Below, piece after piece: positions 7,926 through 35,437 of a stretch of 64,000 nt of DNA. A program made the position numbers and the translations under genes. How positions within the stretch are numbered: the stretch's first letter is position 1; each line of letters opens with the position of its first letter. The notes under the pieces are model-generated. The model saw only the letters and a list, made by a program, of their open reading frames with translations, searched no databases and was not told the origin of the DNA. The stretch covers positions 186,001 to 250,000 of IMG/VR virus record IMGVR_UViG_3300017917_001342; one strand, written 5' to 3'.

Positions 7926-10900
7926 ATGAAAATCAATCAAATTATCAAGCTCAATGAAGAAGATCCCATGGGAGTCGGTAATGACTGGGTAGGGTCAGAT
8001 GGCATTGTAAATGATTTAGAGACTAACAATAGAATTGTAAAAATTACAGGTGAAATAGCTGGTGCACCAGGTGCCACTGCTGAAGAAATTATAGATACAC
8101 CATGGTATAAACGATGGTATAAAAACATGGGCTATGGTATAACGAAACTAGGCCGTGGTGCAAAGTGGACATTAAAATGGGTAGCTGTTCCAGTTATTGC
8201 ATTGTATGATTGTTACAATGCCTATCAAGAAATCGCTGCAATACCAAAAGACGATCCAGATAGATTAGAAAAAGGCACAGCTATAATTTCTAAATTAGTT
8301 GCATCGTACGGCTTACCAGTTGTTGGGGGTTATATAGGTGCATTAATAGGTGCTGGCGTAGGTGTATGGGCAGGTGGTATAGGTGCTTTACCGGCATCAA
8401 CAATTGGTGCACTTATTGGAACTGCTAGTGCAATAACTGCACAGGTAGTATATGGCGACGATATAGATGCAGAAATTGAAAAGCTAGTTAGTGCAATTTT
8501 TGATGTAATTGACAGTGAAGATTCAGAAACTACTACAACACCGCAAGACACTGAATCTAATACTTCACCTGTTCCGGCCGGACAACCTAACTTTGATAAT
8601 TTATCATATGAAGATGCATGGAAGGCAGCAAGAAAATTAGCCACAGAACTAGATCCAGATGAACCTGGGTCTTATTCCTTTGTGTGGCAAGGAAAAACTT
8701 ATCCGACAAGTTCAAAAGATGAACCGTTAATACCAGCCGAACGTAGACGTAATTTAATTACATTAAATCAACTAAACGAAGGTATTGGTTCAGATATCGG
8801 TGCAGTTATAAAAGACCTGTTTAAAGGTGCTAAAACACTAGAGCCAGAAATAAAACAAGGAGCAGATGCAGCCGCAGATGCAGCAAGAGCCGCTGAAGAC
8901 GCAGCCGCTGCATTAAAAGCTGGTCAAAGTGCAGAAGACGCAGCAAACGTTGCAAAAGAATTAAACATTGCAATAAGAGAAAACAATAAATTCCTTGCTG
9001 GACTATTAAATGACGCTAGTCATGTTGTAGAGTTAAACGGAAAGAAATATGCTAGGTATTATAGTCCTGCAAAAGACAAATGGATATGGACAGATATACA
9101 AGCCGCCGAAGCAGGCGGTAAACGATCATCTGGGTTTGTAGCCGATGCAACTGCTAAAGAATTAGATGATCTGATTAAATCTGGTACAGACACTGCAACA
9201 GACGCTGCAAAAGTCGCAGACGATGCTGCAAAAGCTGCTGACGATGCTACAACTACACCGCCTGCTGCCGCAGATGACGCTGCAACATCAACTACACCAA
9301 AACCGGCAGAACCTACAACACCTAAAGCCCCAGAACCTGCAACACCCGCAGCGCCATCTAGACTTACACCTGAATACATAGCAAAAATGAAAGCTAAGCC
9401 TGTAAGTAAATGGACTGATAAAGAACTTGCAGAATGGGGTTATCCGCCCGAACTTAGAAATGCAGTGAGTTTTATACAAAAAACAGATATTGATATGCTG
9501 ATACCTCTGGCTCAAGCATACAAAGTACCAATGCTCAAGAGTATTGCACAGTTAGCAATGAAAACGCCTGGCGCATTGTTCAGAGCTGTTAAATTACCAG
9601 TTACCAATCCAATTGCAATTTTGTTTATTACGGCCCCGGCTGCATTGACATTTTTTAAAGGTGTATTAGAACTTGATCCGTCTGATCCTCAATACAAAGA
9701 AAAATTAACAAAACTAGTTGTTGAATTTGTTGAAACTGTTGGTATCGGTGTTGCTGCTTGGTACATAAGTGGATTTGCCGGTAAAAAGTTAGCTGGCTTG
9801 TTAGGGCTATCAGAAGCTGGTGCATTTGCTTGGTTATTAAAATGGGTTGCTAGAGGCGGTACTATCTGGGCAGTAAACGAAAATGCAACAATACAATCGT
9901 TAATACAAGACCTTATAGGTAAAGGTGCTGATGCAATTGTTGGACCGACTACAAACAATAACGCAACAATAAAAACTAATCCCCTATATAAACAAGGTTT
10001 TGATTGGGCAAAAGCTCGAGGATATTCAGATCACGACTCTGATGCATTTGCTAGACATATTGTTCAGCAAGGCGGATTCCGTAACGAATATAAGTTTAAC
10101 GAACATGCAACTAACACATTTGCTCTTGCATGGTTGTACAAACAATTAAACGAATCTAACAGTCCAGTTAGAATTGTAAAGATAAACAAACACATTAAAA
10201 ATCTGTTAGAATACTTTGACAATTCTAATGCAGTGCATAAATTTGCAATTTCATTGTCGGAATCTATCAGTTTCAATGAAGAACAAACAAATAATTTTAT
10301 GACTAATATAACTGCTGCTATTGCGGCTAACACCAAAGGCGACAAAATGGGTGCGCAAAAAGCATTAGATGCAGCTAAGCAAAGTCAACCTGCAACAGCA
10401 CAAGATCAAATTAATCAAAAGAAAGTACTAGATCAAATGGCTAGAACCAACCCTGGATTAAACATACCGAACACCAATCAAAATGTAACAGAAGACGATC
10501 CGATGGGCGCAGGTAATGATTGGGCAACTACTGCAAATGCAAATGATCCAACTGCAAAAGGCACAGATCTACTTGCTGCGTATAATGAATTTGCTGCAAA
10601 ATATCCTGCTGCTAAATTCTTATTGGACATTGTACCTGTTACAGGTACTGCAACCAGTGTTATTGATGCAAGTCAAGACCTATACAACGGAAAATACGGA
10701 AAAGCTGCACTTGATATTCTAGGTGCTATACCAGGTTTCAAAATTGGAAAATATATAAGTCAAGGTCTAGCTAAAGCTATAAAAGCTGCAAATGTAACTA
10801 CTAAAACTGCAAACTATGCAAACGCTACAGCAGGACTTGTAGGCAATGAAATCAACGAATCACCTAAAGTAGGCGATCACATGATGTTGGAATTGGCAGA

Positions 10901-12959
10901 TGGCCGCGTTGTGGTTGCACCAATTGCAGAACTGCGCGGCAATGGTATAGTAGTAGAACTAGACGAAACTGGTAACCAGTGGTTAGAAGAAAGTCCAGAA
11001 CATCATGCCCTTAAGATAGGTCAAGGTGACGGACACCCATTGAGTACTACAGCCGAAATTTGGAACGCTATGATAGATCAGTTACCAAGCGATACACCGG
11101 ACGGTTGGGCAGAAGTATTCATTAGTATGCAAAATCAAACGGGTCAGCCTGCTAGAATCATGCCAAGACTTTGGTCGCAAATTTGGCGTCAACAGCACAA
11201 TGCGCTAGGGGATAGCCTGACTAGAGTTGATATGACAAATTGGGCAGAAGAAGTAGGTAAAGCATTAGACAGATCAGGTTTAGTTGAATCATCAATAGAA
11301 CCATCTAACAGCAATAAGTTAAAGAAACATCTGGATCCTAAAGACCCTGCAATGCTAGCAGTATGGATGGCAAGTCGTGCTGGTATAAAAGGTGTACCGG
11401 TTGACAAATTTGCCAAAGCCAAAGCTGTACAAAGCGGATTGCCAGCAGACCACTGGTGGAAAAAGATTAAAAAACTAGTGCAAGAAGGTGCAGTACCAAC
11501 AGTGCCTAGACTATTAGCTGCTAGAGATATTGAGCCTCTGGTACATTTTGAAGGCGACTATTACATAGTAAGTCACAACGATGGCAAACATTTAAAGTAC
11601 GATCTAGTTAAAAAAGTAGTAGCAACAACTGATCGTAACACACCTGCATATCAACATGTAGATCATCTAGACACAGGTCTACACAGGATTACTAAAGAAC
11701 AGCTTCGCAGATTAGCTAATGTTGCAATGGAAGCAGATAAACTTGCAGATGGTGAGGACGATACTCCTGATTTGCCAGACCTACTAGGCGTTATTGCACA
11801 GGTAATGGGCCGCAAAGTGCGTAAGCATCCAGATGCATTGTCAACTACCGTTAAGAAATCTGACATGGGTTATGTAGTCAGTAACCTACTGGTTAGACAC
11901 TTAGATGGTACAGAAGCACAGGATTTGAAAAATGCATTGCATCGTGCAGGATACAATGTATCAAAAGTCATTATCAATCCAACAACTATATTGGTAATAC
12001 TGAAAACTACAAAAACAACTCCTAATACCACAGCTATAATAACTGCTACTCCGCAACCAGATGTAGTAGGTGGACTTGCAGAAAGTGCCTATGCTATGGA
12101 AAAGCGTTATTACATAGTTCGTAAAGACGTTCCCACTGCACCAGTACCGGGTATGAGCGGCTATCACCAAAAGAGTGAAGCTGATAAAAAACTTGCCAGC
12201 ATGAAGAACAGTGATCAATATATGGTTCGTGCAATTGACAGCAAGCGTTTGCCAAAAGATGAAATTGCAGAAGCACGTAGAGATTTTAACTTTGACGAAA
12301 ACGATATTGCACGTATAGCAGCAATGGATGATCTTGATGCTGCTAAACGATATGCTATCAAATTGATAACAGCTAAAACTCGTAGACCAATGACTAAAGA
12401 TAAGATCATGTGGTTTACAAATTCTATCAATGATACCAAGACAATGAATCGTTTAGTCAAAATGCTTTACGACATGATGCTAAGTGGCGAAGGTCATGGT
12501 GTTATTGGTGATAGATATTCTACTGGTAAAAGCAGTTATCGCAGACAGTTCGATGAAGAATCACAACGTCTAGATCCAAAATGCTGGAAGGGTTATCGTA
12601 AGCAAGGCACTAAAGTTAAAGACGGAGTTCGTGTTAACAACTGTGTAAAAGTCAACGAAGAAATAAACGAAGCAGAATACCAAGGCAAAAGTGTACCTCT
12701 CAACAAGCCAATACGTACAAGCCCAAGTGAAGGCGGTAAGTTCAAAGTCTATGTAAAGGATCCTAAAACTGGTAACATCAAAATGGTACGTTTTGGTGAT
12801 ACTACTGGGTTGACTATCAAACGTGATGATCCAGAACGTCGTAAGAATTTCCGTGCAAGACACCATTGCGATAATCCAGGTCCAAAAACCAAAGCACGCT
12901 ATTGGTCCTGTAAGATGTGGACTCGCAAGCCTGTTGGTCAAGTGTTGAAAGGAAAATAA
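7926..12959 (+). CDS. Large modular (polyprotein-like) putative internal virion protein, 1677 aa
   Basis: Start moved to MKINQIIKLNEE. Gly-rich hydrophobic segments, PT-TG-like segment, Pro/Ala linker, C-terminal basic Cys-containing mini-domains; many [ILV]-x-E junctions. Confidence 0.8.
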   Translation: MKINQIIKLNEEDPMGVGNDWVGSDGIVNDLETNNRIVKITGEIAGAPGATAEEIIDTPWYKRWYKNMGYGITKLGRGAKWTLKWVAVPVIALYDCYNAYQEIAAIPKDDPDRLEKGTAIISKLVASYGLPVVGGYIGALIGAGVGVWAGGIGALPASTIGALIGTASAITAQVVYGDDIDAEIEKLVSAIFDVIDSEDSETTTTPQDTESNTSPVPAGQPNFDNLSYEDAWKAARKLATELDPDEPGSYSFVWQGKTYPTSSKDEPLIPAERRRNLITLNQLNEGIGSDIGAVIKDLFKGAKTLEPEIKQGADAAADAARAAEDAAAALKAGQSAEDAANVAKELNIAIRENNKFLAGLLNDASHVVELNGKKYARYYSPAKDKWIWTDIQAAEAGGKRSSGFVADATAKELDDLIKSGTDTATDAAKVADDAAKAADDATTTPPAAADDAATSTTPKPAEPTTPKAPEPATPAAPSRLTPEYIAKMKAKPVSKWTDKELAEWGYPPELRNAVSFIQKTDIDMLIPLAQAYKVPMLKSIAQLAMKTPGALFRAVKLPVTNPIAILFITAPAALTFFKGVLELDPSDPQYKEKLTKLVVEFVETVGIGVAAWYISGFAGKKLAGLLGLSEAGAFAWLLKWVARGGTIWAVNENATIQSLIQDLIGKGADAIVGPTTNNNATIKTNPLYKQGFDWAKARGYSDHDSDAFARHIVQQGGFRNEYKFNEHATNTFALAWLYKQLNESNSPVRIVKINKHIKNLLEYFDNSNAVHKFAISLSESISFNEEQTNNFMTNITAAIAANTKGDKMGAQKALDAAKQSQPATAQDQINQKKVLDQMARTNPGLNIPNTNQNVTEDDPMGAGNDWATTANANDPTAKGTDLLAAYNEFAAKYPAAKFLLDIVPVTGTATSVIDASQDLYNGKYGKAALDILGAIPGFKIGKYISQGLAKAIKAANVTTKTANYANATAGLVGNEINESPKVGDHMMLELADGRVVVAPIAELRGNGIVVELDETGNQWLEESPEHHALKIGQGDGHPLSTTAEIWNAMIDQLPSDTPDGWAEVFISMQNQTGQPARIMPRLWSQIWRQQHNALGDSLTRVDMTNWAEEVGKALDRSGLVESSIEPSNSNKLKKHLDPKDPAMLAVWMASRAGIKGVPVDKFAKAKAVQSGLPADHWWKKIKKLVQEGAVPTVPRLLAARDIEPLVHFEGDYYIVSHNDGKHLKYDLVKKVVATTDRNTPAYQHVDHLDTGLHRITKEQLRRLANVAMEADKLADGEDDTPDLPDLLGVIAQVMGRKVRKHPDALSTTVKKSDMGYVVSNLLVRHLDGTEAQDLKNALHRAGYNVSKVIINPTTILVILKTTKTTPNTTAIITATPQPDVVGGLAESAYAMEKRYYIVRKDVPTAPVPGMSGYHQKSEADKKLASMKNSDQYMVRAIDSKRLPKDEIAEARRDFNFDENDIARIAAMDDLDAAKRYAIKLITAKTRRPMTKDKIMWFTNSINDTKTMNRLVKMLYDMMLSGEGHGVIGDRYSTGKSSYRRQFDEESQRLDPKCWKGYRKQGTKVKDGVRVNNCVKVNEEINEAEYQGKSVPLNKPIRTSPSEGGKFKVYVKDPKTGNIKMVRFGDTTGLTIKRDDPERRKNFRARHHCDNPGPKTKARYWSCKMWTRKPVGQVLKGK

Positions 12960-12960: not shown

Positions 12961-13410
12961 ATGCGCTTGTCTGAAATGCTCACATTTGATCAAGACACTA
13001 TAGACCATTTTGCAGAGATACTAGAAAAAGGTGAACCCTGGGCTATACAAACGATCTACGACGAATTAGAAGAATATGGTATACCCGACGGTGAGGAAGC
13101 TGTATTGTTTAGAGAACTGCTACCTGAGATAGTTGCCTGGTTTAATAACGCAATAACTCATGAGGCTCTTGCATATTCTGTAATAGATTACGCAATATTT
13201 CTAATACAGAACGAAAATCTTACAGCATTAATACCATTTGTCGTTAGAAGTTTAAAAGCAAATAAAACCGCAGTAATTAAACATCTGTTAACATTGATAA
13301 AAACCAATCACGAAGGTGCATTAGCAAGAGATTTGTTCAATGATCTATCAAAGTTTAACCTAAATTGGCCTGAATTAGCTGTAATTAAAAAAAGTTTAGA
13401 AGCGTTTTAA
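12961..13410 (+). CDS. Single WPEL-module protein
   Basis: MRLSEML leader; ends NLNWPELAVIKKSLEAF. Confidence 0.8.
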   Translation: MRLSEMLTFDQDTIDHFAEILEKGEPWAIQTIYDELEEYGIPDGEEAVLFRELLPEIVAWFNNAITHEALAYSVIDYAIFLIQNENLTALIPFVVRSLKANKTAVIKHLLTLIKTNHEGALARDLFNDLSKFNLNWPELAVIKKSLEAF

Positions 13411-14142
13411 ATGAGCGATAGCCCCTATACAGTTGTTAGTAAATCGTTTGATGAATTAAATGCTGCAAGTGAAGAAGCGCAGATTGCAGCAGTTAAAGCC
13501 AGACCAAATCTAATAACAAAAATTGATAATCCCAGTGCAGCAGTGCAATGGGCAGCAATTGAAGCTCACGCAATTGTTGCCAGATACTTAGAGCATCTCG
13601 ATGAGCGTGTACAACGAAAACTGATAGAAATAGATTATCGTAATCTACGTTACATAAACAATCCATCGCCTAGTATACAGTTAGCAGCAGTAACAGAAGA
13701 TCCTAAAAGTATTCAGTATATTACCAATCCAACTCCAGAAGCACAGGTTGTAGCAACTAAAAAATGGCCCGAGGCTATACGATACATCAGTAGTCCAACC
13801 GAAGATGCGCAGGTAAATGCAGTTCTTGGTCATCCGTGGTCTATAGAACACATTGCTGAGCCTTGTGTGCAAGCACAAAAAATTGCAATATATAGTCAAC
13901 CAGGTACAATGTTTGACTTGCAATGGCAGTTAGATCCTAATATCTTCAAAGAAGATGTAATCAAAACCGCCATTATTCGCACGATATTAACATCGTTAAA
14001 AAAGGACGGTAATACATATCAGGCAAGAAGATTTATCAATTTTTTAAAATCTTTTGATGTACAATGGCCTGAACTCGCAGTTATAGAACGTAGCATAGGC
14101 AACGAACCAGATGATGAATATGACGAAGGAATTCAACTATGA
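13411..14142 (+). CDS. Short helical-repeat protein (~23-aa repeats) plus C-terminal WPEL module
   Basis: About 6 repeats of P[ST]xxxQxxAVxxxPxxIxYIxN; ends VQWPELAVIERSIG. Confidence 0.8.
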   Translation: MSDSPYTVVSKSFDELNAASEEAQIAAVKARPNLITKIDNPSAAVQWAAIEAHAIVARYLEHLDERVQRKLIEIDYRNLRYINNPSPSIQLAAVTEDPKSIQYITNPTPEAQVVATKKWPEAIRYISSPTEDAQVNAVLGHPWSIEHIAEPCVQAQKIAIYSQPGTMFDLQWQLDPNIFKEDVIKTAIIRTILTSLKKDGNTYQARRFINFLKSFDVQWPELAVIERSIGNEPDDEYDEGIQL

Positions 14143-14888
14143 AAGCCAATGAATTCATTAACGAATCTATCAAATGGCAAGGCAACTCAGGTGCTACTCA
14201 AGCACGCCAAACTGATCATACTATTGAGGAAGCACGACGTTACGTTAAAGAAAACTATCCTCGAAATAAAACCTATACTATCAGCAGACTTGAACCAGGG
14301 TTTAGAGCATTGGATGCCAAAACCGGCTCTACTAATCCCAGTGCAGCAAATGCTACACTAAATCAAGAAGCAGCACTGAACCAGTTTGTTGAAATCTTTA
14401 AACTAAAACAAAATCCCTACATGAGCGGCAGCGAGCAAGTAACTGGCAGTATAGGATTCAGTTGGCATGTAGGTGAAGATAAAGAGCGCAAGCATGCCAT
14501 CTTCTATTATGAAGATCGCGGCATGGGCAATGACAGTATCACCATTGCTGCAAAAACCATTGTTGAACTCAAAGTAATGCAAGAAGTTCTTATTCATACA
14601 GGTCTTATCCCTGATCCTGATGAGGCCAAAGCAAAACGCACCGCTGACGCAGATAAACGTAGAGATGTACTTGCTAAAAAAGGCATTAAAATTGGTACTC
14701 GCATTACTGCTCGTAGACTAGACAACGGCGAAGTGTGGTTTGCTGGCAACGTAACTAGCATTGCACAAAACGGCTCTGTGGGTATTACTATTGATCAAGT
14801 AGATCCTGCTGTACAAGGTGTTACAGTTGGCAGTGTGTATAAAATGAAGCCAGGTAGTATTAGCAAAGACATGATCTCCAATGACTGA
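14139..14888 (+). CDS. Hypothetical putative internal virion protein
   Basis: Leader MKANEFINE/S closely resembles the T4 capsid-targeting sequence; beta-rich SH3/KOW-like C-terminus. Confidence 0.75.
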   Translation: MKANEFINESIKWQGNSGATQARQTDHTIEEARRYVKENYPRNKTYTISRLEPGFRALDAKTGSTNPSAANATLNQEAALNQFVEIFKLKQNPYMSGSEQVTGSIGFSWHVGEDKERKHAIFYYEDRGMGNDSITIAAKTIVELKVMQEVLIHTGLIPDPDEAKAKRTADADKRRDVLAKKGIKIGTRITARRLDNGEVWFAGNVTSIAQNGSVGITIDQVDPAVQGVTVGSVYKMKPGSISKDMISND

Positions 14889-14920: not shown

Positions 14921-15367
14921 ATGCGATTAGCAGATTTGTACGGCGACTTGTTTGAGTCTATCACAGCAGATGATATTAAAGATCCTATTTCCAAGGGACT
15001 AGTTCCTAATTTCATCCACAGTATGCCGTCTACTCATCTGCTAACAGGTATGGATCAATACTATCAATATTATAGATTCTTGATTGCCATTGCAGGTTAC
15101 CCGGAAGATTCCGACATACCATTAACTAGTGTTGTTAGGGATTGGCCTATGACAGTAGCATACACTACACAAGAAAAAGAAATGATAGATAAAGTTGCCA
15201 AACGTATGGGTATATCACCTACAGAAATTGCGTACGAAGGCAGTAAAGAATTACCCGATACCTACACTGTAAGTCCGGTAATGAAATTTTCAATGACTGA
15301 ATCTCAACACCGCAAATTAAAAAATCTAGCAGTTCTAACAGAGGCAATGATAAATGAAACTAAATGA
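14921..15367 (+). CDS. Hypothetical protein, paralogous to the N-terminal domain of the next gene
   Basis: Shared YRF, (A/G)YTxxE and VSPVMxFxM(T/S)E motifs with 15354..15752. Confidence 0.8.
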   Translation: MRLADLYGDLFESITADDIKDPISKGLVPNFIHSMPSTHLLTGMDQYYQYYRFLIAIAGYPEDSDIPLTSVVRDWPMTVAYTTQEKEMIDKVAKRMGISPTEIAYEGSKELPDTYTVSPVMKFSMTESQHRKLKNLAVLTEAMINETK

Positions 15368-23759: not shown

Positions 23760-24788
23760 ATGCGCTTCGCTGAATTGCAACCTCACACTCAATTCAGCGA
23801 AGCTGCTCTCAACTCTGTAACACAGCGTTATATTGATTCACACATAAAACACTTACTATACAAAAAAGACCAGTATGGTCCTCGTAATGTACGTAAAGTT
23901 GTTGAATTCTTAACTGATTTACAAAATCGTTTTAAACGAGATGGCGATCCCACTACATTTGAAATCGCCGAAGTACTTGAACCATATAGACAAGATATTA
24001 TAAAGTACTTGTCTAATTTGTTTGATGGTGTACCAGACAGTTATACGCCTGTATTTCAAGCAGCTATATTAACTAATAGTGGTGTACACTGGCCGGAAAT
24101 AGTTGAAATATTTGAGCCTTATCGAGAACCTATTATTAAAAGAATACTACAAACTGTGCGACACGGTTACAGAGACAGTGATGTAGATTCTTGGGTGACA
24201 GCATTACGAGCAATTGGGGTTGATTGGCCAGAAGTAGATATCATAGAACGAAGCCGAAACGCTAGTAAACAAATCGATGAAAACAGCTTAGTTGCTGATT
24301 CGCATAGACAATATATGCTTGATAATATTAGAGACCGTCGGTTTCATATTATCTTTTCACAATTAATCACCTATTTCAAACCAGATCCAGTTATTGCAGA
24401 TGCATTAACTAAAAACAAATCTGTTGTGCTGCAATACATATCCGATGCAATTAAGAACGGGTATTTCTTAGGTGCTGCAAAATATCTTGTTGGTTTGCAA
24501 AATGTTGGTGTTGCGTGGCCGGAACTGGAAAACATTAAAACTGCAATAAAAGTACCGTGCATAACTCGTATGCTAACAATACTAAAAAAGTCTGATTACG
24601 ATAGAGACCATCTGACAAATATATTAGAAACAATAAAGTATTTGAGAAAAGCTGGACTTGATTGGCCTGAGTTAAAAATTATCAACGACGCAGCCGAAAC
24701 GGAACTTGATTATCATCCCGAAGATGAAGAAGAAGAATACATCGCAACTGATGACGATCGCGGCGACTACTACAGAGATCTCTATTAA
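23760..24788 (+). CDS. WPEL-module repeat protein (4 copies)
   Basis: WPEI, WPEV, WPEL, WPEL; internal IDE/N junction. Confidence 0.85.
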   Translation: MRFAELQPHTQFSEAALNSVTQRYIDSHIKHLLYKKDQYGPRNVRKVVEFLTDLQNRFKRDGDPTTFEIAEVLEPYRQDIIKYLSNLFDGVPDSYTPVFQAAILTNSGVHWPEIVEIFEPYREPIIKRILQTVRHGYRDSDVDSWVTALRAIGVDWPEVDIIERSRNASKQIDENSLVADSHRQYMLDNIRDRRFHIIFSQLITYFKPDPVIADALTKNKSVVLQYISDAIKNGYFLGAAKYLVGLQNVGVAWPELENIKTAIKVPCITRMLTILKKSDYDRDHLTNILETIKYLRKAGLDWPELKIINDAAETELDYHPEDEEEEYIATDDDRGDYYRDLY

Positions 24789-24795
24789 ACAACGA

Positions 24796-24801: not shown

Positions 24802-24830
24802 TCCCTATAACAGCACGGGTATTTTTCTAA

Positions 24831-26198: not shown

Positions 26199-26199
26199 T

Positions 26200-28059: not shown

Positions 28060-29227
28060 AAACGCAGATGAATTAATTGCTGATCGTATGGACGGTTTAA
28101 AAAAGCAAGAACCTCTAGCACTTAGAGGATTAATCCATAATCTAAAGAGCAGACCCTATGAATGGTACGATGATGATATTGCTGCACTGTTAGAAGAATA
28201 CAAAGCTGACATATTAAAATACATCACACGCAAATATCATGTGGGCCAGATATCATTACCAACTAATGATATTAAAAAGCTAATGAGTGTTGGAATACAA
28301 TGGCCTGAATTAACTGATCTTGTCAACCGATACAAAACAGCTATTATCAAAAATGTACTAGAAACTCTTAAGCTAGATTACAGAAACGTAGCTGACACTG
28401 TAGGTACGTTGACTAGTATGAATCTCGGTTGGAAAGAATTAGACGCAATTAATCGTAGCTTAAATGCACTGCGTAATAATGTAAACGAAGCTTTAAAGTA
28501 TGATAACAATGAAATAGAAGAACTCAAAACTAACATAATTCAAGACCTACATGACGGATATTATAGAGATGCGTTAGATGTCATAGCAACACTGTGGCAT
28601 GACAATAGTAATCTTGGCGACGTAACTGCTATAACACGTTTATTGGAAAAACATAAACGTGGGTTGATTACACAGTTATTAACTGTAATCAAATATAGTA
28701 GCACTTACGAATTAAGCAAATATTTTAAAGATTTTATTAAAGGACTACAAGATTTTGGGATTGATTGGCCAGAATTCGACGCTATGTTAAAATCGATCAA
28801 CGCTGACAAAACAACACTTGATGAATCTTATTCAAAAAACGATGCAGAACAGTATAAGGATGAAATCATTAATACCATTAAGAAGGATGATATGGATGAT
28901 TTGTTTGAAATGCTTGCTGAGTTTGCATGGATACCGAGAGCACTTGTAGGCGATGTTACAAAACTAAATCGTATACTAGAACTACACAAAGTTCGAGTAA
29001 TAAAAGCATTACTGTCTTATATGCGAGAGCTAGATGACAGCGGTATTTGCTACATCATGCCACAAATTCTAGGCGGTTTAGAACATGCTGGCATAAATTG
29101 GCCCGAGTTAAAAATTATAGATCAAAGTGTTGACAAAATACAAAAACGTCGCGAAGCCGAAGATGACGATTTGTATGAGAGTAGCAAAGCAGTAAATACT
29201 ACTGCAAAAAAGGCTCGCAGACGATGA
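28046..29227 (+). CDS. WPEL-module repeat protein
   Basis: WPEL, WKEL, WPEF, WPEL; junctions VNE/A, LDE/S, LYE/S. Confidence 0.85.
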   Translation: MTSSKNADELIADRMDGLKKQEPLALRGLIHNLKSRPYEWYDDDIAALLEEYKADILKYITRKYHVGQISLPTNDIKKLMSVGIQWPELTDLVNRYKTAIIKNVLETLKLDYRNVADTVGTLTSMNLGWKELDAINRSLNALRNNVNEALKYDNNEIEELKTNIIQDLHDGYYRDALDVIATLWHDNSNLGDVTAITRLLEKHKRGLITQLLTVIKYSSTYELSKYFKDFIKGLQDFGIDWPEFDAMLKSINADKTTLDESYSKNDAEQYKDEIINTIKKDDMDDLFEMLAEFAWIPRALVGDVTKLNRILELHKVRVIKALLSYMRELDDSGICYIMPQILGGLEHAGINWPELKIIDQSVDKIQKRREAEDDDLYESSKAVNTTAKKARRR

Positions 29228-31533
29228 CACCTCATGAAATTCGCGTAACTCTAAATTTCTTCTTAGAAGATCTACAAGAAGAACGTTACATTGATGCTGT
29301 CAATGGTCTGATAGAATTGTATGCCTATACCAATTCTGATTATCCTCCATATGCTGATCGTAAAAACCAAATACCCTTTGACAAAATCAGCGAATTACTA
29401 CAACAGCATAAAACTGGTATTGTAAAACGCTTGTTGCGTTACATGAAGCATTATGATGCAGATGAAGTAAAACGATTTGTGTTGCTTGCTATCAATGCAT
29501 TAAAACACTTTGGTATAGATTGGCCTGAACTAGCTGTTATGAAAAACAGCGTTTCGCCGGAAGTTGAAGAATCCTGGAGCAACAAATATAAGAAAAGCAT
29601 CAATTGCAGCAATCCAAAAGGTTTTAGTCAACGTGCGCACTGTGCTGCTAGACGTAAGCGCAAAGCTGGCGGTAAGACTAAGAGCAAGCCAGTGAGAGAA
29701 GCATTGAGTTCGCCGCTGGGAGGTATTGTGCTGTCAATGCAAGACGCATTGCGAAAAGGCAGTGATGCCGCAGTATCGCATCGTGTTATTGACCTTTGGC
29801 GTGCTAACACAGCAGAACGACAGCGTGCAAGCGATATGCTAGCAGATGTAGAACACTTGGTAACAAGTTATGTAGAACGTCATCTCGGTTCAGAAAATCA
29901 TTTAGATGTACAAGACGGCTTGAACATGCTTCAAGTTTTACCACCAAGTGAAGATTGGGCAGACTTGCAAGTGTTATTAAACAAATACAAAACCAACATA
30001 CTAAAGTATTTGTTAAAGTGCATGAAGGATAATGATATAGATATACCTCATTATCGAATACCTGTGTTGAAAAAATGGGGCACAGATTGGCCAGAACTGG
30101 ACACAATCTACACCAGTGCTGATTCAGAATTGAAAAAACAAAAACGTATAGACGAGGGTGTTATTGCCTATCATGCTAGCCCGGTTGCTACAATTCGCAG
30201 CAAACGTTTTTGGCCATTTACACATTTTGGCAGTGAAAAAGCCGCAGCAGATCGTATCAAATATCTAAAGAAAACAGGCGAACTTGCAAAGGACTCGCCA
30301 GTCAGAGTCTATCAAGTTGAACTCAATATCAACAATCCCGCTGTAATCAAAGATGAACCTGTGCAACACAGTGCAACACAGTTTGCATTTGCATTGAAAA
30401 AGGCCAAGCTGATTTCTCAAGAGGAAATGGAAAGCATCACAAAACTTGGACACGATCCTGTTACCTATAAGCCTACTATGAGTTACGCTGATGCTGAAAA
30501 GCAACGCAATCGTAAATTGAGAGCATTGATGCGTAGCAAAGGCTTTGACGGATTTGCGTATGTGAATCGCTTTGAAGACAAAGGCAGTATGAGCTATGTC
30601 ATACTGGATCCCGCACAAGCTAGAACATTGCGACCAGTTAAAGCAGCGCCCGCAGAATTAAAAGAAGATGAACGCAACAATTTTTCCACAGTGTTTAGAA
30701 ATCGTTCTGAACAAGAAGGTGGTCACCGTTTTACACTCAATGCAGATGAATATGTAGAACATATAGAAAAACTCTTAAAATATGGAATGCTAGCAACTGA
30801 TAATGTAGTGATAGAATTAGCTACGCTGGGTCGACGCAGGCCCGATGCAATTAAAAATTGGCCAGAACTAGCTAACTTATTAAATCAACACAAAGATGAG
30901 TTGATGCGCATTATACAACATCACTTTAATAAAGACGTTACCAGTGAGCATGCAATGGCTCGCAGTGTTGATGTTGCAGGTGCATTAAAGCTAATTGGTA
31001 TAGACTGGCCAGAAATCGCTCAGCTTATTGAAAAGAACAAGCACAAAATAGTCAAAACACTGCTTGAGTTTATGCGAGATGAATATGACGCCCATATCCC
31101 ATACGAACTTAAAACACTGCGTAGCTATGGTGCAGATTGGCCAGAGTTAGCAGTAATTGAAAAAAGCCTAAACGCAGGATTGAATGAATCAAAGTCTAAC
31201 AAATTACCGCAGGACGTTACTGACATGGTAATGGACATGCTTAAACGAGATGGCACAGGCATCGCACTGTATCATATTTGGGAATGGAAATTAGACATAG
31301 ATAAACTGCCAGAATTAGAAGAATTCCTAAACGACCGCAAGCAAACCTATATGGAAATTATGTTGAAAAACATGAAGATGGGCGGAGACGCACTATACGG
31401 TACAGAACAGTATTTAGAACGTTTAGAAGGTACTAAAATAAATTGGCCTGAACTCAAAGTCATACGTAATAGCTTAAATAAGCTATTAGCAGAATTGCAT
31501 GCGTCGGAAGAACATCCAAATGAAAACCATTGA
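29224..31533 (+). CDS. Multidomain protein: WPEL modules + basic Cys peptide + ADP-ribosyltransferase (ART-PolyVal-like)
   Basis: AYHAS...THFG...VYQVELNINNP...KGFDGFAYVNRFED...SYVILDPAQ; six WPE[LI]; TAAATA at 29193-29198 upstream. Confidence 0.85.
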   Translation: MTPHEIRVTLNFFLEDLQEERYIDAVNGLIELYAYTNSDYPPYADRKNQIPFDKISELLQQHKTGIVKRLLRYMKHYDADEVKRFVLLAINALKHFGIDWPELAVMKNSVSPEVEESWSNKYKKSINCSNPKGFSQRAHCAARRKRKAGGKTKSKPVREALSSPLGGIVLSMQDALRKGSDAAVSHRVIDLWRANTAERQRASDMLADVEHLVTSYVERHLGSENHLDVQDGLNMLQVLPPSEDWADLQVLLNKYKTNILKYLLKCMKDNDIDIPHYRIPVLKKWGTDWPELDTIYTSADSELKKQKRIDEGVIAYHASPVATIRSKRFWPFTHFGSEKAAADRIKYLKKTGELAKDSPVRVYQVELNINNPAVIKDEPVQHSATQFAFALKKAKLISQEEMESITKLGHDPVTYKPTMSYADAEKQRNRKLRALMRSKGFDGFAYVNRFEDKGSMSYVILDPAQARTLRPVKAAPAELKEDERNNFSTVFRNRSEQEGGHRFTLNADEYVEHIEKLLKYGMLATDNVVIELATLGRRRPDAIKNWPELANLLNQHKDELMRIIQHHFNKDVTSEHAMARSVDVAGALKLIGIDWPEIAQLIEKNKHKIVKTLLEFMRDEYDAHIPYELKTLRSYGADWPELAVIEKSLNAGLNESKSNKLPQDVTDMVMDMLKRDGTGIALYHIWEWKLDIDKLPELEEFLNDRKQTYMEIMLKNMKMGGDALYGTEQYLERLEGTKINWPELKVIRNSLNKLLAELHASEEHPNENH

Positions 31534-34171
31534 TTTAAACATATTTTTAGAAGCTCAAGGTCCTGCAAAGATACCAACTGGTTCTGGTAAGTCCACTATT
31601 GCAAACCCTGCGCATTCTCCCGGTAGCTATTACGAAGGTGATCCTGCTAACTTTGATTTTGGTGCACAGCGTAGAAACTACCAAGCATTAAATGCCGCAT
31701 TGGCACGTAACGGTAAAAAGCTTAATTACATCGGTGTTTCCAAAGCAGATAGTGGTAGAGACACCTTTGTTGCAACTGCACCCGGTGTTGTATGGTACAA
31801 ATACGAAGGCAGCAATCCACAGTCTGGACAAAACATACTCTACATCAACGGTGTTAAAGACAAGTTTACGTCATTTATGGCATTGTCGCCAGAGGAACAA
31901 GACAAGAAACTGTCTGCAAGTCCTGCTGCATTGAGTTTACAAAAAGGTGATGTGTTTGGTTATATCAATGCACTGGCTGCGTCAGATGCGCCTGCAAACA
32001 CTGTTGTTGACAGTTTGAATCAAAACAAAGATTTGATACTGCAACGAATAGCAAACGAACTGTTAAACTACCCAAAATACATATCTAAGATAAAAACCTT
32101 TAATAAAGCATTGGCTAACAAAGGTGCGTTGCTACCATGGTTAACAGTTGACGAAATTTTAAAAGCAATCCAGCCTGTGATATCGAAAGATCTGTTCGAC
32201 TATTTTTTAAGGTGGCCAAGTACAGATTCATTGAAACGTATCAAATCTGCAATCGCAGTTGGATTGCTGTTTGACATGTCTTATATGCAAGAATTGACCA
32301 ATAACAATGTTGATGGGTTTGTCGAACGCTTTTCTAGTCCCGGCATGTTTACCGGACCAGGATATCGCATGGTAGACAACCTAATAGAATTTCTAACTCT
32401 TGTACGCTACAGTAACCCACGATTAGAAGTTAAGAATCTAATTGACAATGTGGATTATAAGCGCATTGTAAAATATTTAAACGATTCTAGCAATGTAACA
32501 GGAAATGTATATCAAGCTGCTAAACTGTTGTTAAATGCAGGATTTCCAAAAGATCGCATTGTACAGGCATTTGAAGATCTAAAAGAAGAAATGGTTGGCA
32601 ATGCACTGCTTAAATTAGTTAGAACTGCTAGAGTTGATGATATTGGAAATCTCAATGCAGCACTTAATATACTTGGTATATCATGGCCCGAAATTGTTGG
32701 GGATAATATACGTAAGCTGATTGAAAATAACAAAACTAATATTATTAAAACTATACTTACTAATGTAAAAAATGGAGTTTTTCAAAATGCGTTAAATGCT
32801 GTCGATTTCTTTATAGATAACGACTACAAATGGCCAGAGCTAGCTGCAATAAAACGAAGCTTAATCGCTTCACTAAATAACCGAACAGACGAAACACGCA
32901 ACAGTTTGAGTAACAATATGAAAATCGACGAAGTTGAACAATTAGACGAGGACCTTGGTAATCTAAATCAGCTAGGTATGGGTCCGCTGCTTAATGTACT
33001 CAAACAGGAGCATTGGAGTCGCCGAAATTACGATCCAGAGATACGTCCGGTCGGCAAGCGTTTTGTTGGATCGGGCTATGACCGACGAGTAGGTCCTAAC
33101 AGCGAAATACAAGACATTGGTGCAGTAAAAGACATTCTTAAATCTCTACGTAAAGCATTTAAAACCACAGCAGCCGTTGCATTTGCACTATATATAGGCG
33201 GCAAACCTGTGATGTTTGGTGTCACAGATGAATATACACTAGCAGGCAGCAGTCGTCATGGTAAAATTGCCTACGATCTAACACCCTGGGCAGAAACTGT
33301 TAAGCTGTATGATCAGCAACAAAAAGGTCGCTACGCACCTAGTACACAGTTGACAACTATGCGTGACAAAGAAGAACGCAATTACAGTGATCCACGCGAC
33401 AAATGGGATACTCCTGTAATGGTTACTCAAAAATACGCAGGTGATATGATATCAACTGGCGACTTGTCAACTATTGCAAAAGTAATTGAATTTATTTCTG
33501 CTAACACAGGCGAACCTATCACAGCTAAGTTAGTAATGAAAGACGAAGCTGGCTTTGAAAAAATGAAAAGCCGACAGATCAATCATGTTGCAGTTCGCAG
33601 TGCAGCAGAAGATCTCAAGCATAGACTAAGTGTTTACAAGAACAGCAAAAAACCATCTGTAGATACTATTGAAGATTTTATTGCTATGAGCCTTAGAAAA
33701 CCAGGCAGTGTAGTTCAGTTTGCAGGTGTACCATATCGTTTAACTGCAACCAGCTACGATAAAATAGAACCAGTATCTTTGCTATCAGGTAAAGAGTTTA
33801 GCACAGATTATAAAAGCAATCTCAAGGACGATTATCATAACAGTGTTAGGATCTATTACAGATACGACAAAGACACTAATCAATTGTTGCCGATATATGC
33901 CGAATGGTATGACAAAACTGATCCAAATAACCCATCATATCAACGAGTATCTGCTGTTCTAGATGGCAAAGGTTATATCAAAAGTAGACTAAAAGTGCAG
34001 TCGCTAACAAAAGAAGCGGTGATACCAAAAATATTAGAGAAGATTAAATCGTCGCAATTCAAAGATGCATTGTTATATGTTCAGGCATTGCAAAAAATGG
34101 GTATGGACTGGCCAGAGTTAAGTGTTATTGAACGCAGTGCAAATGCTGAATTAAACAAGCCGAGAGACTGA
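31520..34171 (+). CDS. Large WPEL-module protein, apparently a fusion of two genes
   Basis: Start moved to MKTIDLNIFLE/A; internal TAAATA (32874) and in-frame MKIDEVEQLDE/D at 32918; both halves end in WPEL. Confidence 0.8.
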   Translation: MKTIDLNIFLEAQGPAKIPTGSGKSTIANPAHSPGSYYEGDPANFDFGAQRRNYQALNAALARNGKKLNYIGVSKADSGRDTFVATAPGVVWYKYEGSNPQSGQNILYINGVKDKFTSFMALSPEEQDKKLSASPAALSLQKGDVFGYINALAASDAPANTVVDSLNQNKDLILQRIANELLNYPKYISKIKTFNKALANKGALLPWLTVDEILKAIQPVISKDLFDYFLRWPSTDSLKRIKSAIAVGLLFDMSYMQELTNNNVDGFVERFSSPGMFTGPGYRMVDNLIEFLTLVRYSNPRLEVKNLIDNVDYKRIVKYLNDSSNVTGNVYQAAKLLLNAGFPKDRIVQAFEDLKEEMVGNALLKLVRTARVDDIGNLNAALNILGISWPEIVGDNIRKLIENNKTNIIKTILTNVKNGVFQNALNAVDFFIDNDYKWPELAAIKRSLIASLNNRTDETRNSLSNNMKIDEVEQLDEDLGNLNQLGMGPLLNVLKQEHWSRRNYDPEIRPVGKRFVGSGYDRRVGPNSEIQDIGAVKDILKSLRKAFKTTAAVAFALYIGGKPVMFGVTDEYTLAGSSRHGKIAYDLTPWAETVKLYDQQQKGRYAPSTQLTTMRDKEERNYSDPRDKWDTPVMVTQKYAGDMISTGDLSTIAKVIEFISANTGEPITAKLVMKDEAGFEKMKSRQINHVAVRSAAEDLKHRLSVYKNSKKPSVDTIEDFIAMSLRKPGSVVQFAGVPYRLTATSYDKIEPVSLLSGKEFSTDYKSNLKDDYHNSVRIYYRYDKDTNQLLPIYAEWYDKTDPNNPSYQRVSAVLDGKGYIKSRLKVQSLTKEAVIPKILEKIKSSQFKDALLYVQALQKMGMDWPELSVIERSANAELNKPRD

Positions 34172-34174
34172 TCT

Positions 34175-35437
34175 ATGAAGATTACAGAGTTATCAGAGGC
34201 TGTAGAATTACCGCCAGATGTTATAGAACAACTTAACGGTTTATTAATTAAACCATTGCGTGATACTCTGATAAGACGTATGGCATATCCAAATCTCTAT
34301 TACATAATTGATACATTTGAAGATATGCTTGCTGATAAAAAATATGCCAAGTCGCCGCGTCGTAAACAGGCAATTGCGTTGCTATTTCCATATGTTTTGC
34401 AAGCATTAGATGAGATTATCAAAAATGCCAAAGCAGACGGTAGCTATTATCCTTTCACTAGAATAGTCAAGCTACTGAGATACAGCATAGACAACGAAGC
34501 TGTTGCAGAAGTTTTAGAAAACAACAAAGGCAAACTCTTACAGATATTAAAAGCCTTTATTGACAAAACTCACAAATCTGCACATAACGTTGGACGAAAT
34601 GCCGACGAGAGTGCAATTGTAGATATTGTCAATGCTCTTGATCATGCAGGCATTGATTGGATAGAACTCAAAGACCTATATAAACAACATTTCTATAATC
34701 GCTATAGCGGCTGGTTAAGTCAATCGCAAGACAAATGGGGTACAAATACTGTATTCAATGTGTTAAACGACATGAGTAGGCACAAACTCACTATAGATGA
34801 TCTCAACGAAGAACTAGCGAACCGTTTACAGTCTATGAAATCAACAATATTAAACAGATCACTGTTTAATTTTAGACATGATTCTGTGCGATACGGTTTG
34901 GTAGAAATGGGAGACTACTATAAAAAACTGCGACGTCTTGGGTTCGATTGGCCTGAATTACAAATATCTAGCTTAGATCAATTCAAAACACCTATCATGC
35001 GTGAGTTACTGACACTGTTTAAAGAACAAAACGTAGGCCGCGCAGCAAAAATAGTAGCAGAATTAAAGCAGGCAACAGATTGGCCAGAACTAGCTGCTAT
35101 GGAACGATCACTAGGTGCTAAACAACTTGATGAAGAACTGCACCCTGCACGTATCAAAGCAGTTGATGAATCTCTGCGCAACGGTGATTATATAGGTGCT
35201 GCACATTATATGGGTGTGTACGGTGTCAACATAGATGAGTTCGACAAGCGTGTTCGTGAACGATTTGAAGAAATGAAACCAGAAATCATTCGTGAAATGC
35301 TACAGCTTGTCAAAAACATTTCGCTCGATCGTGGTTATCGAATAATGGACAATGTTCGTAAAGCTGGACTAGGTTGGCCAGAGATTGATATCATATTCAA
35401 AAGTCTAGACAAGTCCTACACTGAACGATACCGTTAA
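34175..35437 (+). CDS. WPEL-module repeat protein
   Basis: Leader MKITELSE/A; WIEL, WPEL, WPEL, WPEI; LDE/E junction. Confidence 0.85.
   Translation: MKITELSEAVELPPDVIEQLNGLLIKPLRDTLIRRMAYPNLYYIIDTFEDMLADKKYAKSPRRKQAIALLFPYVLQALDEIIKNAKADGSYYPFTRIVKLLRYSIDNEAVAEVLENNKGKLLQILKAFIDKTHKSAHNVGRNADESAIVDIVNALDHAGIDWIELKDLYKQHFYNRYSGWLSQSQDKWGTNTVFNVLNDMSRHKLTIDDLNEELANRLQSMKSTILNRSLFNFRHDSVRYGLVEMGDYYKKLRRLGFDWPELQISSLDQFKTPIMRELLTLFKEQNVGRAAKIVAELKQATDWPELAAMERSLGAKQLDEELHPARIKAVDESLRNGDYIGAAHYMGVYGVNIDEFDKRVRERFEEMKPEIIREMLQLVKNISLDRGYRIMDNVRKAGLGWPEIDIIFKSLDKSYTERYR

What the first reader, a model, noticed from the sequence alone, without database searches (positions are those of the whole stretch)
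7926..35437. Candidate new system: ~28-kb arsenal of capsid-packaged polyproteins cut into effectors at [ILV]-x-E sites
Seen (leaders): most ORFs begin with a short M-[KR]-h-x-[ED]-h...E leader, for example MKANEFINE, MKLNDLFE, MKLDDIFE, MKITELSE, MKINQIIKLNE and MQIQSLME. Seen (junctions): inside the ORFs, boundaries between unrelated domains fall on [ILV]-x-E followed by A/S/G/N/D/E. In 19695..21914 the order is IFE/ParB-ITE/WPEL-INE/basic-VNE/GNAT-IDE/MNT-VTE/unknown. In 15354..17153 the junctions are LFE, LFE, ISE, VSE and VKE. Established: T4 internal proteins carry a ~10-aa capsid-targeting leader (IPIII MKTYQEFIAE), prohead protease gp21 cleaves after (L/I)-x-E, and IPI and Alt are injected anti-restriction and host-takeover proteins. 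Inference: one packaging tag loads a string of effectors that head maturation releases as separate small, ejectable proteins. Multidomain 'polyvalent' phage proteins are known, but I know of no description of this protease-punctuated design at this scale. Caveat: [ILV]-x-E is common by chance; the evidence is its position at junctions.
Basis: partly seen in the sequence, partly recalled or inferred. Interest (0 to 1): 0.93.

Follow-up and report, generated by a model that had tools for sequence, protein, structure and literature searches.

The report
Protease-punctuated polyprotein cluster in a megaphage
A 28-kb gene block of an uncultivated 519-kb phage encodes long proteins built from cassettes separated by the short signal at which T4-type head proteases cut, which suggests (from sequence evidence only) that strings of small proteins and enzymes are loaded into the phage head and cut apart there.

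Summary
Window 7926-35437 holds 17 co-directional ORFs of a 518,643-bp phage contig. Ten of the 17 start with a T4-like leader ending in h-x-E, against 4 of 41 other ORFs. The refined motif [ILV]-[DNST]-E-[small/polar] occurs 39 times against 12 expected (z 7.5), with no excess outside the cluster or with Asp at P1.

In 145 independent WPEL proteins from metagenomes, 417 of 452 internal unit ends are followed by h-x-E about 11 residues later (p 7e-121). A further 92 unit ends sit at a stop codon at the same distance and lack the motif. Domain gains and losses between orthologues fall at these sites. A structure model places all four predicted sites of one ORF in its four longest internal inter-domain linkers. 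A homologue of one cluster protein is a mass-spectrometry-detected virion protein of phage PA5oct.

Not shown: cleavage, packaging, or the protease gene of this contig, which I could not retrieve.

Verdict: probably prohead-protease-processed, capsid-targeted polyproteins. This is a new variant of known kinds (T4 internal proteins, polyvalent proteins). 'Effector arsenal' fits only a minority of the modules.

The parts
7926..12959 (+). 1677-aa polyprotein. It has the leader MKINQIIKLNE|E, and an internal copy of the same post-site N-terminus (VTE|DDPMGAGNDW, about aa 855). It also has Gly-rich hydrophobic segments and a Cys/basic C-terminal module.
   Evidence: DUF6861, just below the Pfam cut-off; phrog_7595, phrog_4359; 14 fragments under the strict site rule
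12961..13410 (+). 149-aa protein ending in a WPEL cap four residues before the stop; no h-x-E leader.
13411..14142 (+). 243-aa protein with short HEAT-like/DUF4116-type repeats and a C-terminal WPEL cap. Multi-copy relatives occur in Atu_ph07 (12 places) and Salicola phage SCTP-2 (14 places).
14139..14888 (+). 249-aa protein with leader MKANEFINE|S; mature part unknown, basic (pI 9).
14921..15367 (+). 148-aa protein with leader MRLADLYGDLFE|S, preceded by the TAAATATC motif.
15354..17153 (+). 599-aa polyprotein. Order: leader (LFE8) / unknown / LFE133 / nucleotidyltransferase / ISE337 / HELTH zincin-like module / VSE465 / Gly-rich 88-aa module absent from the orthologue / VKE553 / basic tail.
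17378..19693 (+). 771-aa protein. It has an unknown N-terminal part, a weak GNAT match and three WPEL units separated by LPE|S and ISE|S. The orthologue has an extra 179-aa module between LSE| and VAE|.
19695..21914 (+). 739-aa polyprotein. Order: IFE8 / ParB-like 9-169 / WPEL unit 170-288 / basic 57-aa module (pI 11.8) 289-345 / GNAT-like 346-516 / MNT nucleotidyltransferase 517-622 / unknown 623-739.
21946..22788 (+). 280-aa ORF without leader, WPEL or family match. It is conserved in the relatives; whether it belongs to the system is doubtful.
22848..23756 (+). 302-aa protein with leader MRLLDIFTPDYLLE|D. Its core (aa 45-190) is 36% identical to the PA5oct virion protein EST35_0205.
23760..24788 (+). 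342-aa protein with a leader ending FSE|A, two WPEL double units separated by IDE|N, and an acidic tail.
24831..26198 (+). 455-aa WPEL protein. The leader MQIQSLME|A is repeated internally as PSLME|A.
26200..28059 (+). 619-aa leaderless array of five WPEL units. Sites IDE111, LDE223, LDE400 and LDE506 lie in the four longest internal low-confidence linkers of the model.
28046..29227 (+). 393-aa leaderless array of three WPEL units (VNE|A, LDE|S, LYE|S) with a basic 15-aa tail.
29224..31533 (+). 769-aa leaderless protein. It carries WPEL units, a 43-aa Cys/basic module directly after VEE|S, and an unknown 344-aa part.
31499..34171 (+). 890-aa ORF. The likely start is 31520 (MKTIDLNIFLE|A). It carries WPEL units, an unknown roughly 400-aa C-terminal domain shared with L004_11291, and a WPEL cap at the end.
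34175..35437 (+). 420-aa WPEL protein with leader MKITELSE|A and internal site LDE|E.
52782..53513 (-). Possible outlying member: a 243-aa ORF with leader MRIFEFDTLDE|A, weak zincin (SprT-like/DUF6782) matches and the same TAAATATC upstream motif.

Best explanation
The block encodes substrates of a T4-type (S77, gp21-like) prohead protease.

Proposed mechanism:
- Many of the proteins enter the assembling prohead by a short N-terminal propeptide of the T4 capsid-targeting type.
- During head maturation the protease cuts after the Glu of [L/I/V]-x-E. This removes the leader and severs the polyproteins at every exposed inter-module linker.
- The products are dozens of separate polypeptides of roughly 5-35 kDa that stay inside the head with the DNA.

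The products fall into three classes:
- Acidic alpha-helical WPEL units. These are the bulk of the block; their function is unknown, and I suggest head-internal packing or adaptor proteins.
- Small, very basic, probably DNA-binding modules.
- A minority of enzymes typical of injected 'polyvalent' proteins: two nucleotidyltransferases, GNAT-like, ParB-like and zincin-like modules. These are likely to be ejected with the DNA.

Shown: the grammar (leader, separator, cassette), its conservation in an independent protein family, and the linker position of the sites.

Inferred: cleavage, the identity of the protease, packaging, and ejection.
For: - Leaders: 10 of 17 cluster ORFs against 4 of 41 others. 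They resemble the T4 gp24 N-terminus and the published 10-aa CTS with L/I-x-E processing.
- Motif excess: z 7.5 in the cluster, none outside it, none with Asp at P1. In the 145 independent proteins it is z 14.5.
- Site logo: P3 is L/I/V, P2 is D/N, P1' is A/S.
- WPEL units in the window: 26 unit ends, of which 7 lie at the C-terminus, 16 are followed by h-x-E and 3 by neither (p 2e-5). The distant relative L004 shows 7 of 7 internal ends followed by h-x-E plus 3 at the C-terminus.
- WPEL units in the independent set: 417 of 452 internal ends are followed by h-x-E at a median of +11 residues (p 7e-121), with controls depleted.
- C-terminal tails in that set have a median length of 10 aa and only 9 of 92 carry the motif. 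A stop codon and a site are therefore interchangeable.
- Indels of 50 aa or more between orthologues: 8 of 16 boundaries lie within 2 aa of h-x-E (null 1.9, p 3e-4; controls 0-2).
- Two small modules recur in different proteins, always starting directly after h-x-E.
- In the AlphaFold model of ORF 26200 (mean pLDDT 72), all four predicted sites lie in the four longest internal segments with pLDDT below 50. Such segments cover 9.5% of residues. The other 12 h-x-E occurrences lie outside the low-confidence segments, ten of them inside helices.
- The ParB-like module equals a whole stand-alone protein in another phage.
- The PA5oct homologue is detected in virions by MS, has a CTS-like N-terminus and lies in a cluster of virion genes. 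PA5oct has a gp21-type protease.
- The closest cultured relatives by DNA polymerase (Atu_ph07, Rak2-like phages) encode S77 proteases next to the portal, scaffold and capsid genes. The literature reports that group 1 and group 2 jumbo phages carry a gp21 orthologue with the same phyletic pattern as the portal protein.
Against: - There is no proteomic or biochemical evidence for this uncultivated phage.
- The S77 gene of this contig was not retrieved. It is not in the window or within 10 kb of either end. Four pattern scans and one protein search did not reach it.
- Seven cluster ORFs, and most of the 145 family members, lack a clear leader.
- One indel (loss of the GNAT module in L002) does not respect the sites.
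- The conservation test had little power.
- The model of ORF 19695 is too poor to be informative (mean pLDDT 47).
- No T4-type late promoter is present, so late expression is not shown.
Confidence: 0.6

Rival explanations
1. The proteins are cut at h-x-E by the prohead protease, but the WPEL arrays are scaffold or core-like assembly proteins. Like T4 gp22, gp67 and gp68, they would be degraded to clear the head, rather than being a cargo that is kept and ejected.
For: WPEL units are all-helical and mostly acidic (pI 4.5-5.7). T4 core proteins are cut into fragments at several L/I-x-E sites. A capsid for 519 kb needs a very large core. No enzymatic domain is found in ORFs 23760-35437.
Against: The predicted products are folded units of 105-230 aa, too large to leave through capsid pores. 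This differs from the short peptides described for T4. The same polypeptides carry enzymes and basic DNA-binding-like modules. The family is diverse, shuffled and multi-copy, which fits conflict or cargo genes better than essential scaffolds.
Confidence: 0.15
2. The polyproteins are processed at h-x-E by another protease and are not head-internal. Candidates are the embedded zincin-like module, as proposed for polyvalent proteins, the AAA+ Lon/Clp-like enzyme at 238-2370, or a host enzyme.
For: ORF 15354 holds an HELTH module with weak Peptidase_M78/DUF6782 matches. Iyer et al. proposed MPTase-driven processing of polyvalent proteins. An ATP-dependent protease gene lies 5.5 kb upstream.
Against: HExxH is not enriched in 145 WPEL-family proteins (5 observed against 3.8 expected), so an embedded zincin cannot be the general processing enzyme. 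A strict Glu at P1 with L/I/V at P3 and A/S at P1' is the published signature of T4-type head proteases. The N-terminal leaders mimic T4 propeptides. The PA5oct homologue is in virions.
Confidence: 0.1
3. h-x-E is a conserved linker or capping element of uncleaved multidomain proteins. The proteins act full-length, as classical polyvalent or repeat proteins.
For: The motif sits at a fixed distance after the WPEL cap (median 11 residues, IQR 9-13), as a structural element might. No cleavage has been observed.
Against: The motif is absent when the unit ends the protein (9 of 92 tails; 8 of 28 tails of 14 aa or more), so the unit itself does not need it. The same tripeptide ends the N-terminal leaders and separates unrelated folds. 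It lies in low-confidence, mostly non-helical linkers in the model. Asp does not substitute for Glu.
Confidence: 0.12
4. It is chance: [ILV]-x-E is common and the junction pattern is a reading artefact.
For: The bare tripeptide is frequent; about 36-40% of 22-aa windows contain one.
Against: All the tests above argue against it, including an independent set of 145 proteins (p 7e-121) and negative controls.
Confidence: 0.01

Closest known systems
T4 internal proteins IPI-III and Alt, with their capsid targeting sequence, and prohead protease gp21 (Peptidase S77)
   Same: A short N-terminal propeptide ends in L/I-x-E, and cleavage follows Glu with Ala or Ser next. The cargo behind a shared leader is diverse and fast-evolving. 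Some enzymes are packaged and ejected. Alt is also trimmed at an internal C-proximal site.
   Different: T4 cargo proteins are single-module proteins with one maturation cut (Alt has two). Here up to about 14 sites per polypeptide separate modules that appear to be independent folded products. The locus is 27.5 kb. Many members lack the leader. There is no sequence homology to the T4 IPs.
Polyvalent proteins of phages and conjugative elements (Iyer, Burroughs, Anand, de Souza, Aravind 2017)
   Same: Several unrelated conflict-type domains occur in one polypeptide (Pol-beta NTase, GNAT, ParB-like, zincin). Delivery with the DNA and processing into units were predicted.
   Different: That paper proposed processing by embedded MPTase domains. 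Here the separators carry the signature of the head maturation protease and zincins are rare. The Pfam MPTase-PolyVal and LPD families were not matched. The dominant module is a new helical repeat.
phiKZ, 201phi2-1 and SPN3US inner-body or ejection proteins cut by gp175/gp245
   Same: Clustered paralogous head-internal proteins are present in many copies, cut after Glu by an S77-related protease and ejected into the host.
   Different: Their motif is S/A/G-x-E, with a small residue at P3. Almost all reported cuts remove N-terminal propeptides that are then cleared. A design that releases several retained modules has not been described. There is no sequence or fold match.
T4 prohead core proteins gp22, gp67 and gp68
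   Same: They are helical, acidic and cut at many L/I-x-E sites.
   Different: They are degraded to short peptides and expelled. They are single-copy essential genes, not a shuffled multi-gene family carrying enzyme cassettes.

Membership tests
T4-type capsid-targeted, gp21-processed head proteins | N-terminal propeptide of about 6-20 aa ending in L/I-x-E | tested here: met
   10 of 17 ORFs, with the E at position 8-14. Published rule; T4 gp24 and gp23 read from the T4 record. Seven ORFs do not meet it.
T4-type capsid-targeted, gp21-processed head proteins | The same genome encodes a Peptidase S77 prohead protease | tested here: inconclusive
   It is absent from the window and from 10 kb on each side. 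It is present in Atu_ph07, K64-1, pEa_SNUABM_47 and PA5oct and on many 430-870 kb contigs. The gene of contig Ga0192394_117770 was not reached.
T4-type capsid-targeted, gp21-processed head proteins | The protein is present in the virion and its N-terminus starts after the Glu | not testable with these tools
   The phage is uncultivated. The only indirect evidence is that PA5oct EST35_0205, a homologue of ORF 22848, is MS-detected in virions.
Polyvalent proteins (Iyer et al. 2017) | Two or more unrelated conflict-type globular domains in one polypeptide | tested here: met
   ORF 15354 has an NTase plus a zincin-like module. ORF 19695 has ParB-like, GNAT-like and MNT modules.
Polyvalent proteins (Iyer et al. 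2017) | Zincin MPTase hub domain, or LPD domains of that family | tested here: inconclusive
   One HELTH module gives only weak M78/DUF6782 matches (E about 0.07). Neither MPTase-PolyVal nor any LPD family was among the Pfam matches. HExxH is not enriched in the wider family.
phiKZ-type inner-body proteins | Cleavage motif S/A/G-x-E and homology to the gp93/gp95 paralogue families | tested here: not met
   P3 is L/I/V in 32 of 34 sites and in 393 of 417 sites. No PHROG, phage tblastn or fold match was found.
Any curated family for the WPEL repeat | A match to a Pfam, PHROG, PDB or BFVD entry | tested here: not met
   There are no Pfam or PHROG hits for ORFs 23760-35437 and no tblastn hit in 50,697 phage records. 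Foldseek finds only generic HEAT/ARM/TPR-like similarity, with no match at E of 0.001 or better and TM-score of 0.24 or less.

The most novel reading that the evidence does not exclude
A family of at least 600 proteins of very large, mostly uncultivated phages uses a polyprotein strategy for its head cargo. Independent folded cassettes (WPEL helical units, basic peptides, enzymes) are strung together and delimited by head-protease sites that are interchangeable with start-leader and stop-codon boundaries. Evolution can then add, drop and shuffle ejected proteins as cassettes, and one translation product yields many mature internal proteins. This would be the first described protease-punctuated polyprotein arsenal in a dsDNA phage.
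Probability: 0.5. Interest if true: 0.8.

Novelty: new variant of a known kind. Interest (0 to 1): 0.72.

Why it matters
If the cuts are real, giant phages carry far more distinct internal and ejected proteins than their gene counts suggest. The rule 'leader or h-x-E before, h-x-E or stop after' would then let mature head cargo be predicted from sequence alone in hundreds of metagenomic phages.

It would link two separate literatures, T4 capsid-targeting and maturation on one side and polyvalent injected proteins on the other. It would also supply a concrete processing enzyme where the polyvalent-protein model assumed embedded peptidases.

It defines a new helical repeat family (WPEL) of at least 622 cluster representatives with no annotation.

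It also gives directly testable predictions: exact N- and C-termini for about 70 products in this locus.

Tried and rejected
- DNA similarity to 50,697 phage records: none. Protein similarity for a WPEL ORF: none.
- T4 late promoter TATAAATA: 0 matches.
- Hunt for the contig's own S77 protease: no match among the PHROG scans of window ORFs and no S77 among the genes called within 10 kb of either window end. A protein search listed 120 of 7,998 hits, none from the 518,643-bp contig.
- A first guess at the Atu_ph07 protease (ASV44717) turned out to be a gp15-like protein, and the 'Clp-like' gene a Ro60/TROVE protein.
- WPEL genes are not found within 8 kb of S77 genes in about 200 fetched loci.
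- Motif conservation against flank identity in orthologues: too few diverged flanks, no significant result.
- The first automated indel test had a counting flaw and double-counted events. I redid it with unique events.
- The structure of ORF 19695 is too low in confidence to define boundaries.
- Fold searches of the WPEL model gave only generic solenoid similarity.
- An embedded zincin as the general processing enzyme: rejected, because HExxH is not enriched.
- The phiKZ paper PMC3323674 is not held.


Full report
**What the sequence is.** The window is positions 186001-250000 of a 518,643-bp viral contig (IMGVR_UViG_3300017917_001342, which is JGI Ga0192394_117770). Its family-B DNA polymerase (37543-40311) is closest to Agrobacterium phage Atu_ph07 (49% identity), then to Sinorhizobium phage Phosso and the Rak2-like jumbo phages. 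It has no DNA-level relative among 50,697 phage records. The phage is therefore an uncultivated member of the large T4-related jumbo myoviruses.

**The observation.** Between 7926 and 35437 lie 17 co-directional plus-strand ORFs with almost no intergenic space, 9,045 codons in all.
- Ten start with a leader of the form M-[K/R/Q]-h-x-x-h...h-x-E, against 4 of 41 other ORFs in the window (p 2e-4).
- For ORF 31499 the leader starts at an internal Met (31520).
- Seven ORFs have no leader.

**Is it more than chance?**
- [ILV]-x-E is over-represented in the cluster (164 against 124 in composition-preserving shuffles, z 4.3).
- The refined pattern [ILV]-[DNST]-E-[ASGNDET] is over-represented threefold (39 against 12.3, z 7.5).
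- Non-cluster genes of the same window show no excess (z 0.8), and the same pattern with Asp instead of Glu shows none either.
- I chose 34 sites by position only: the ends of leaders, the first h-x-E after a repeat unit, and the sites that flank indels or domains. They give P3 as L17/I9/V6/F2, P2 mostly D or N, and P1' as A11/S10 (Ala plus Ser p 1e-10).
- This matches the published rule for T4 gp21, which cuts after Glu in L/I-x-E and was first seen at a glutamyl-alanyl bond. SPN3US shows a preference for Ser at P1'.

About half of the block is not made of unrelated domains. It consists of roughly 37 copies of a 45-residue two-helix repeat ending in G-h-x-W-P-E-L. Runs of these repeats end in a cap, WPEL-x-x-I-x-x-S.
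- In the window there are 26 such caps. Seven lie within 25 residues of a stop codon, 16 are followed by h-x-E within 22 residues, and 3 are neither (background 0.36, p 2e-5).
- In a relative of about 29% identity (L004), 3 caps are C-terminal and 7 of 7 internal ones are followed by the motif.
- The repeat has no Pfam or PHROG family.
- A profile of 32 window repeats, searched against 1.84 billion proteins, found 622 cluster representatives (117 below E 1e-30). These carry up to 16 repeats in proteins of up to 2,070 aa.

**Independent test.** I used 145 of those proteins, all representatives at 50% identity and none from the window or its close relatives.
- They hold 544 caps, of which 92 are at the C-terminus.
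- Of the 452 internal caps, 417 (92%) are followed by h-x-E within 22 residues (background 0.40, p 7e-121). The Glu lies at a median of 11 residues after the cap (IQR 9-13).
- P3 is L216/I121/V56, P2 is D91/N81, and P1' is S105/A77/N53/D49.
- Control tripeptides ending in D, K, Q, N, S or T are depleted there.
- The C-terminal tails have a median length of 10 residues. Only 9 of 92 contain the motif, and only 8 of the 28 tails long enough to hold it do.
- The motif is therefore not part of the repeat fold. It appears only when something else follows, and a stop codon sits where the Glu would be. That is the behaviour expected of a separator that makes internal units end like terminal ones.

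**Cassette behaviour.** Syntenic relatives were recovered (L002 from ENA, L003 from NCBI).
- Orthologous polyproteins differ by whole modules. These include an 87-88-aa module between VSE| and VKE| in ORF 15354, a 179-aa module between LSE| and VAE| in the orthologue of ORF 17378, a 58-aa module between ITE| and VKE| and a 117-aa unit between LKE| and VNE| in the orthologue of ORF 19695, and a 176-aa double unit between LDE| and LDE| in ORF 26200.
- Over eight unique indels of 50 aa or more, 8 of 16 boundaries lie within 2 residues of an h-x-E (null 1.9, p 3e-4; seven control tripeptides give 0-2).
- One event, the loss of most of the GNAT-like module in L002, does not respect the sites.
- Two small modules recur in different proteins of the wider family and always begin directly after h-x-E. 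They are a basic one starting NFADGKGPG and a Cys/basic one starting WS..YKKSI.
- Post-site N-termini are also duplicated between a leader and an internal site in ORFs 7926 and 24831.

**Structure.**
- A model of ORF 26200 from six sequences (mean pLDDT 72) is all-helical. It has eight segments below pLDDT 50, covering 9.5% of residues.
- The four sites predicted from the cap rule (E111, E223, E400, E506) fall in the four longest internal low-confidence linkers. The chance of that is about 8e-5.
- The other 12 h-x-E occurrences lie outside the low-confidence segments, ten of them inside helices.
- The model of ORF 19695 is poor (mean pLDDT 47). Only its WPEL unit is confident, at residues 171-277, between ITE169 and INE288.
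- Fold searches found only generic solenoid similarity.

**Module identities.**
- Secure: an MNT/Pol-beta nucleotidyltransferase (ORF 19695, aa 517-622) and a cytidylyl/NMNAT-like nucleotidyltransferase that starts right after LFE133 (ORF 15354).
- Weaker: GNAT-like modules, a zincin-like HELTH module, and a ParB-like module that corresponds to a whole stand-alone 165-aa protein of phage RsoM2USA.
- There are also very basic small modules: 57 aa with pI 11.8 and 43 aa with pI 11.2.
- Most WPEL units are acidic.
- This domain set is that of the 'polyvalent proteins' of Iyer et al. 2017, who predicted delivery with the DNA and processing by embedded zincins. In the 145 family members HExxH is not enriched (5 against 3.8), so an embedded zincin is not the general processing enzyme.

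**Link to the virion and the protease.**
- The core of ORF 22848 is 36% identical to PA5oct EST35_0205. That protein is annotated as a structural protein from ESI-MS/MS, begins MKLFEVFTLYE followed by D, and lies in a run of MS-detected virion genes.
- PA5oct has a prohead scaffold/protease gene.
- Atu_ph07 encodes a gp21 homologue (32% identity to T4 gp21, E 5e-18). K64-1 and pEa_SNUABM_47 have it between the portal and the scaffold and capsid genes.
- The comparative literature reports that group 1 and group 2 jumbo phages carry the gp21 orthologue with the same phyletic pattern as the portal protein.
- I could not retrieve the protease gene of this contig. This is the main gap.

**Conclusion.** The most likely reading (about 0.6) is that these are capsid-targeted polyproteins cut by the T4-type head protease into many internal proteins, some of which are probably ejected enzymes. 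The rivals are:
- cleavage for clearance of scaffold-like proteins (0.15);
- processing by another protease outside the head (0.10);
- uncleaved linkers (0.12);
- chance (refuted).

A 2026 review of jumbo phages and the SPN3US/phiKZ proteolysis papers describe removal of N-terminal propeptides, not module-releasing polyproteins. I therefore rate this as a new variant of known kinds. It is not categorically new, and the label 'effector arsenal' applies to only part of the locus.

Noticed in passing
window 14899, 17367, 22837, 24796, 41751 (+); 48607, 52738, 53517 (-); 7914 (-): TAAATATC occurs 9 times (3.2 expected; no shuffle reached 9). Eight copies lie on the coding strand 3-35 nt upstream of ORF starts, in two cases only 3 nt before the ATG. 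This is a candidate phage promoter, possibly giving leaderless mRNAs. The T4 late box TATAAATA is absent.
   Followed up: partly
window 52782-53513 (-): A 243-aa ORF outside the cluster has a CTS-like leader (MRIFEFDTLDE followed by A), weak SprT-like/DUF6782 zincin matches and the TAAATATC motif upstream. It may be a further head-targeted protein.
   Followed up: partly
window 22848-23756 and 41783-42649; L004 6862-7722: Three otherwise different proteins end with the same C-terminal motif, ..DL..LMK.YG[IV] followed by the stop. Its meaning is unknown; it could be a C-terminal signal.
   Followed up: no
window 26200, 28046, 29224: The three leaderless WPEL ORFs start within -14 to +2 nt of the preceding stop codon (ATGA-type overlaps). 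How they would reach the prohead is unexplained. Possibilities are translational coupling, binding to tagged partners, or the repeat itself acting as a signal.
   Followed up: no
window 238-6105 and contig upstream (L009): A NAD-salvage set is present: a PnuC-like transporter (3630-4298), a NadR-like adenylyltransferase (4291-5334), and NAMPT and a NUDIX-NMNAT gene just upstream of the window. Nearby are an AAA+ Lon/ClpB-like protease (238-2370) and a T7-type protein kinase (5509-6105, minus strand).
   Followed up: partly
L004, L005, L221, L222: More distant contigs with the same trio (the ORF 22848 family, a WPEL polyprotein, and the C-terminal domain family of ORF 31499) also carry heme oxygenase, ferredoxin-dependent bilin reductase, an Hc1-like gene, FtsH and Endonuclease_NS. 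These are cyanophage-like auxiliary genes, which hints at cyanobacterial hosts for part of the family.
   Followed up: no
window 7831-7860: A GC-rich hairpin (aagggtggtgc...gcgccaccctt) followed by a T-rich run, directly before the first cluster gene. It looks like an intrinsic terminator that closes the upstream unit.
   Followed up: no
window 12400-12959 (C-terminus of ORF 7926): The last roughly 130 aa match phrog_4359 and phrog_7595, which are small Cys/basic domains of unknown function defined on other phages. Here they sit after KVNE|EINE|A as terminal cassettes.
   Followed up: no
window 13411-14142: Its short HEAT-like/DUF4116-type repeats have 12 matching places in Atu_ph07 and 14 in Salicola phage SCTP-2. 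This is a second multi-copy repeat family of giant phages.
   Followed up: partly
window 55945-56484 (-) and 60445-62298 (+): An HNH endonuclease gene lies among small minus-strand ORFs. A 617-aa collagen-like tail-fibre gene is followed, beyond the window, by ORFs of 973 and 1,735 aa.
   Followed up: no
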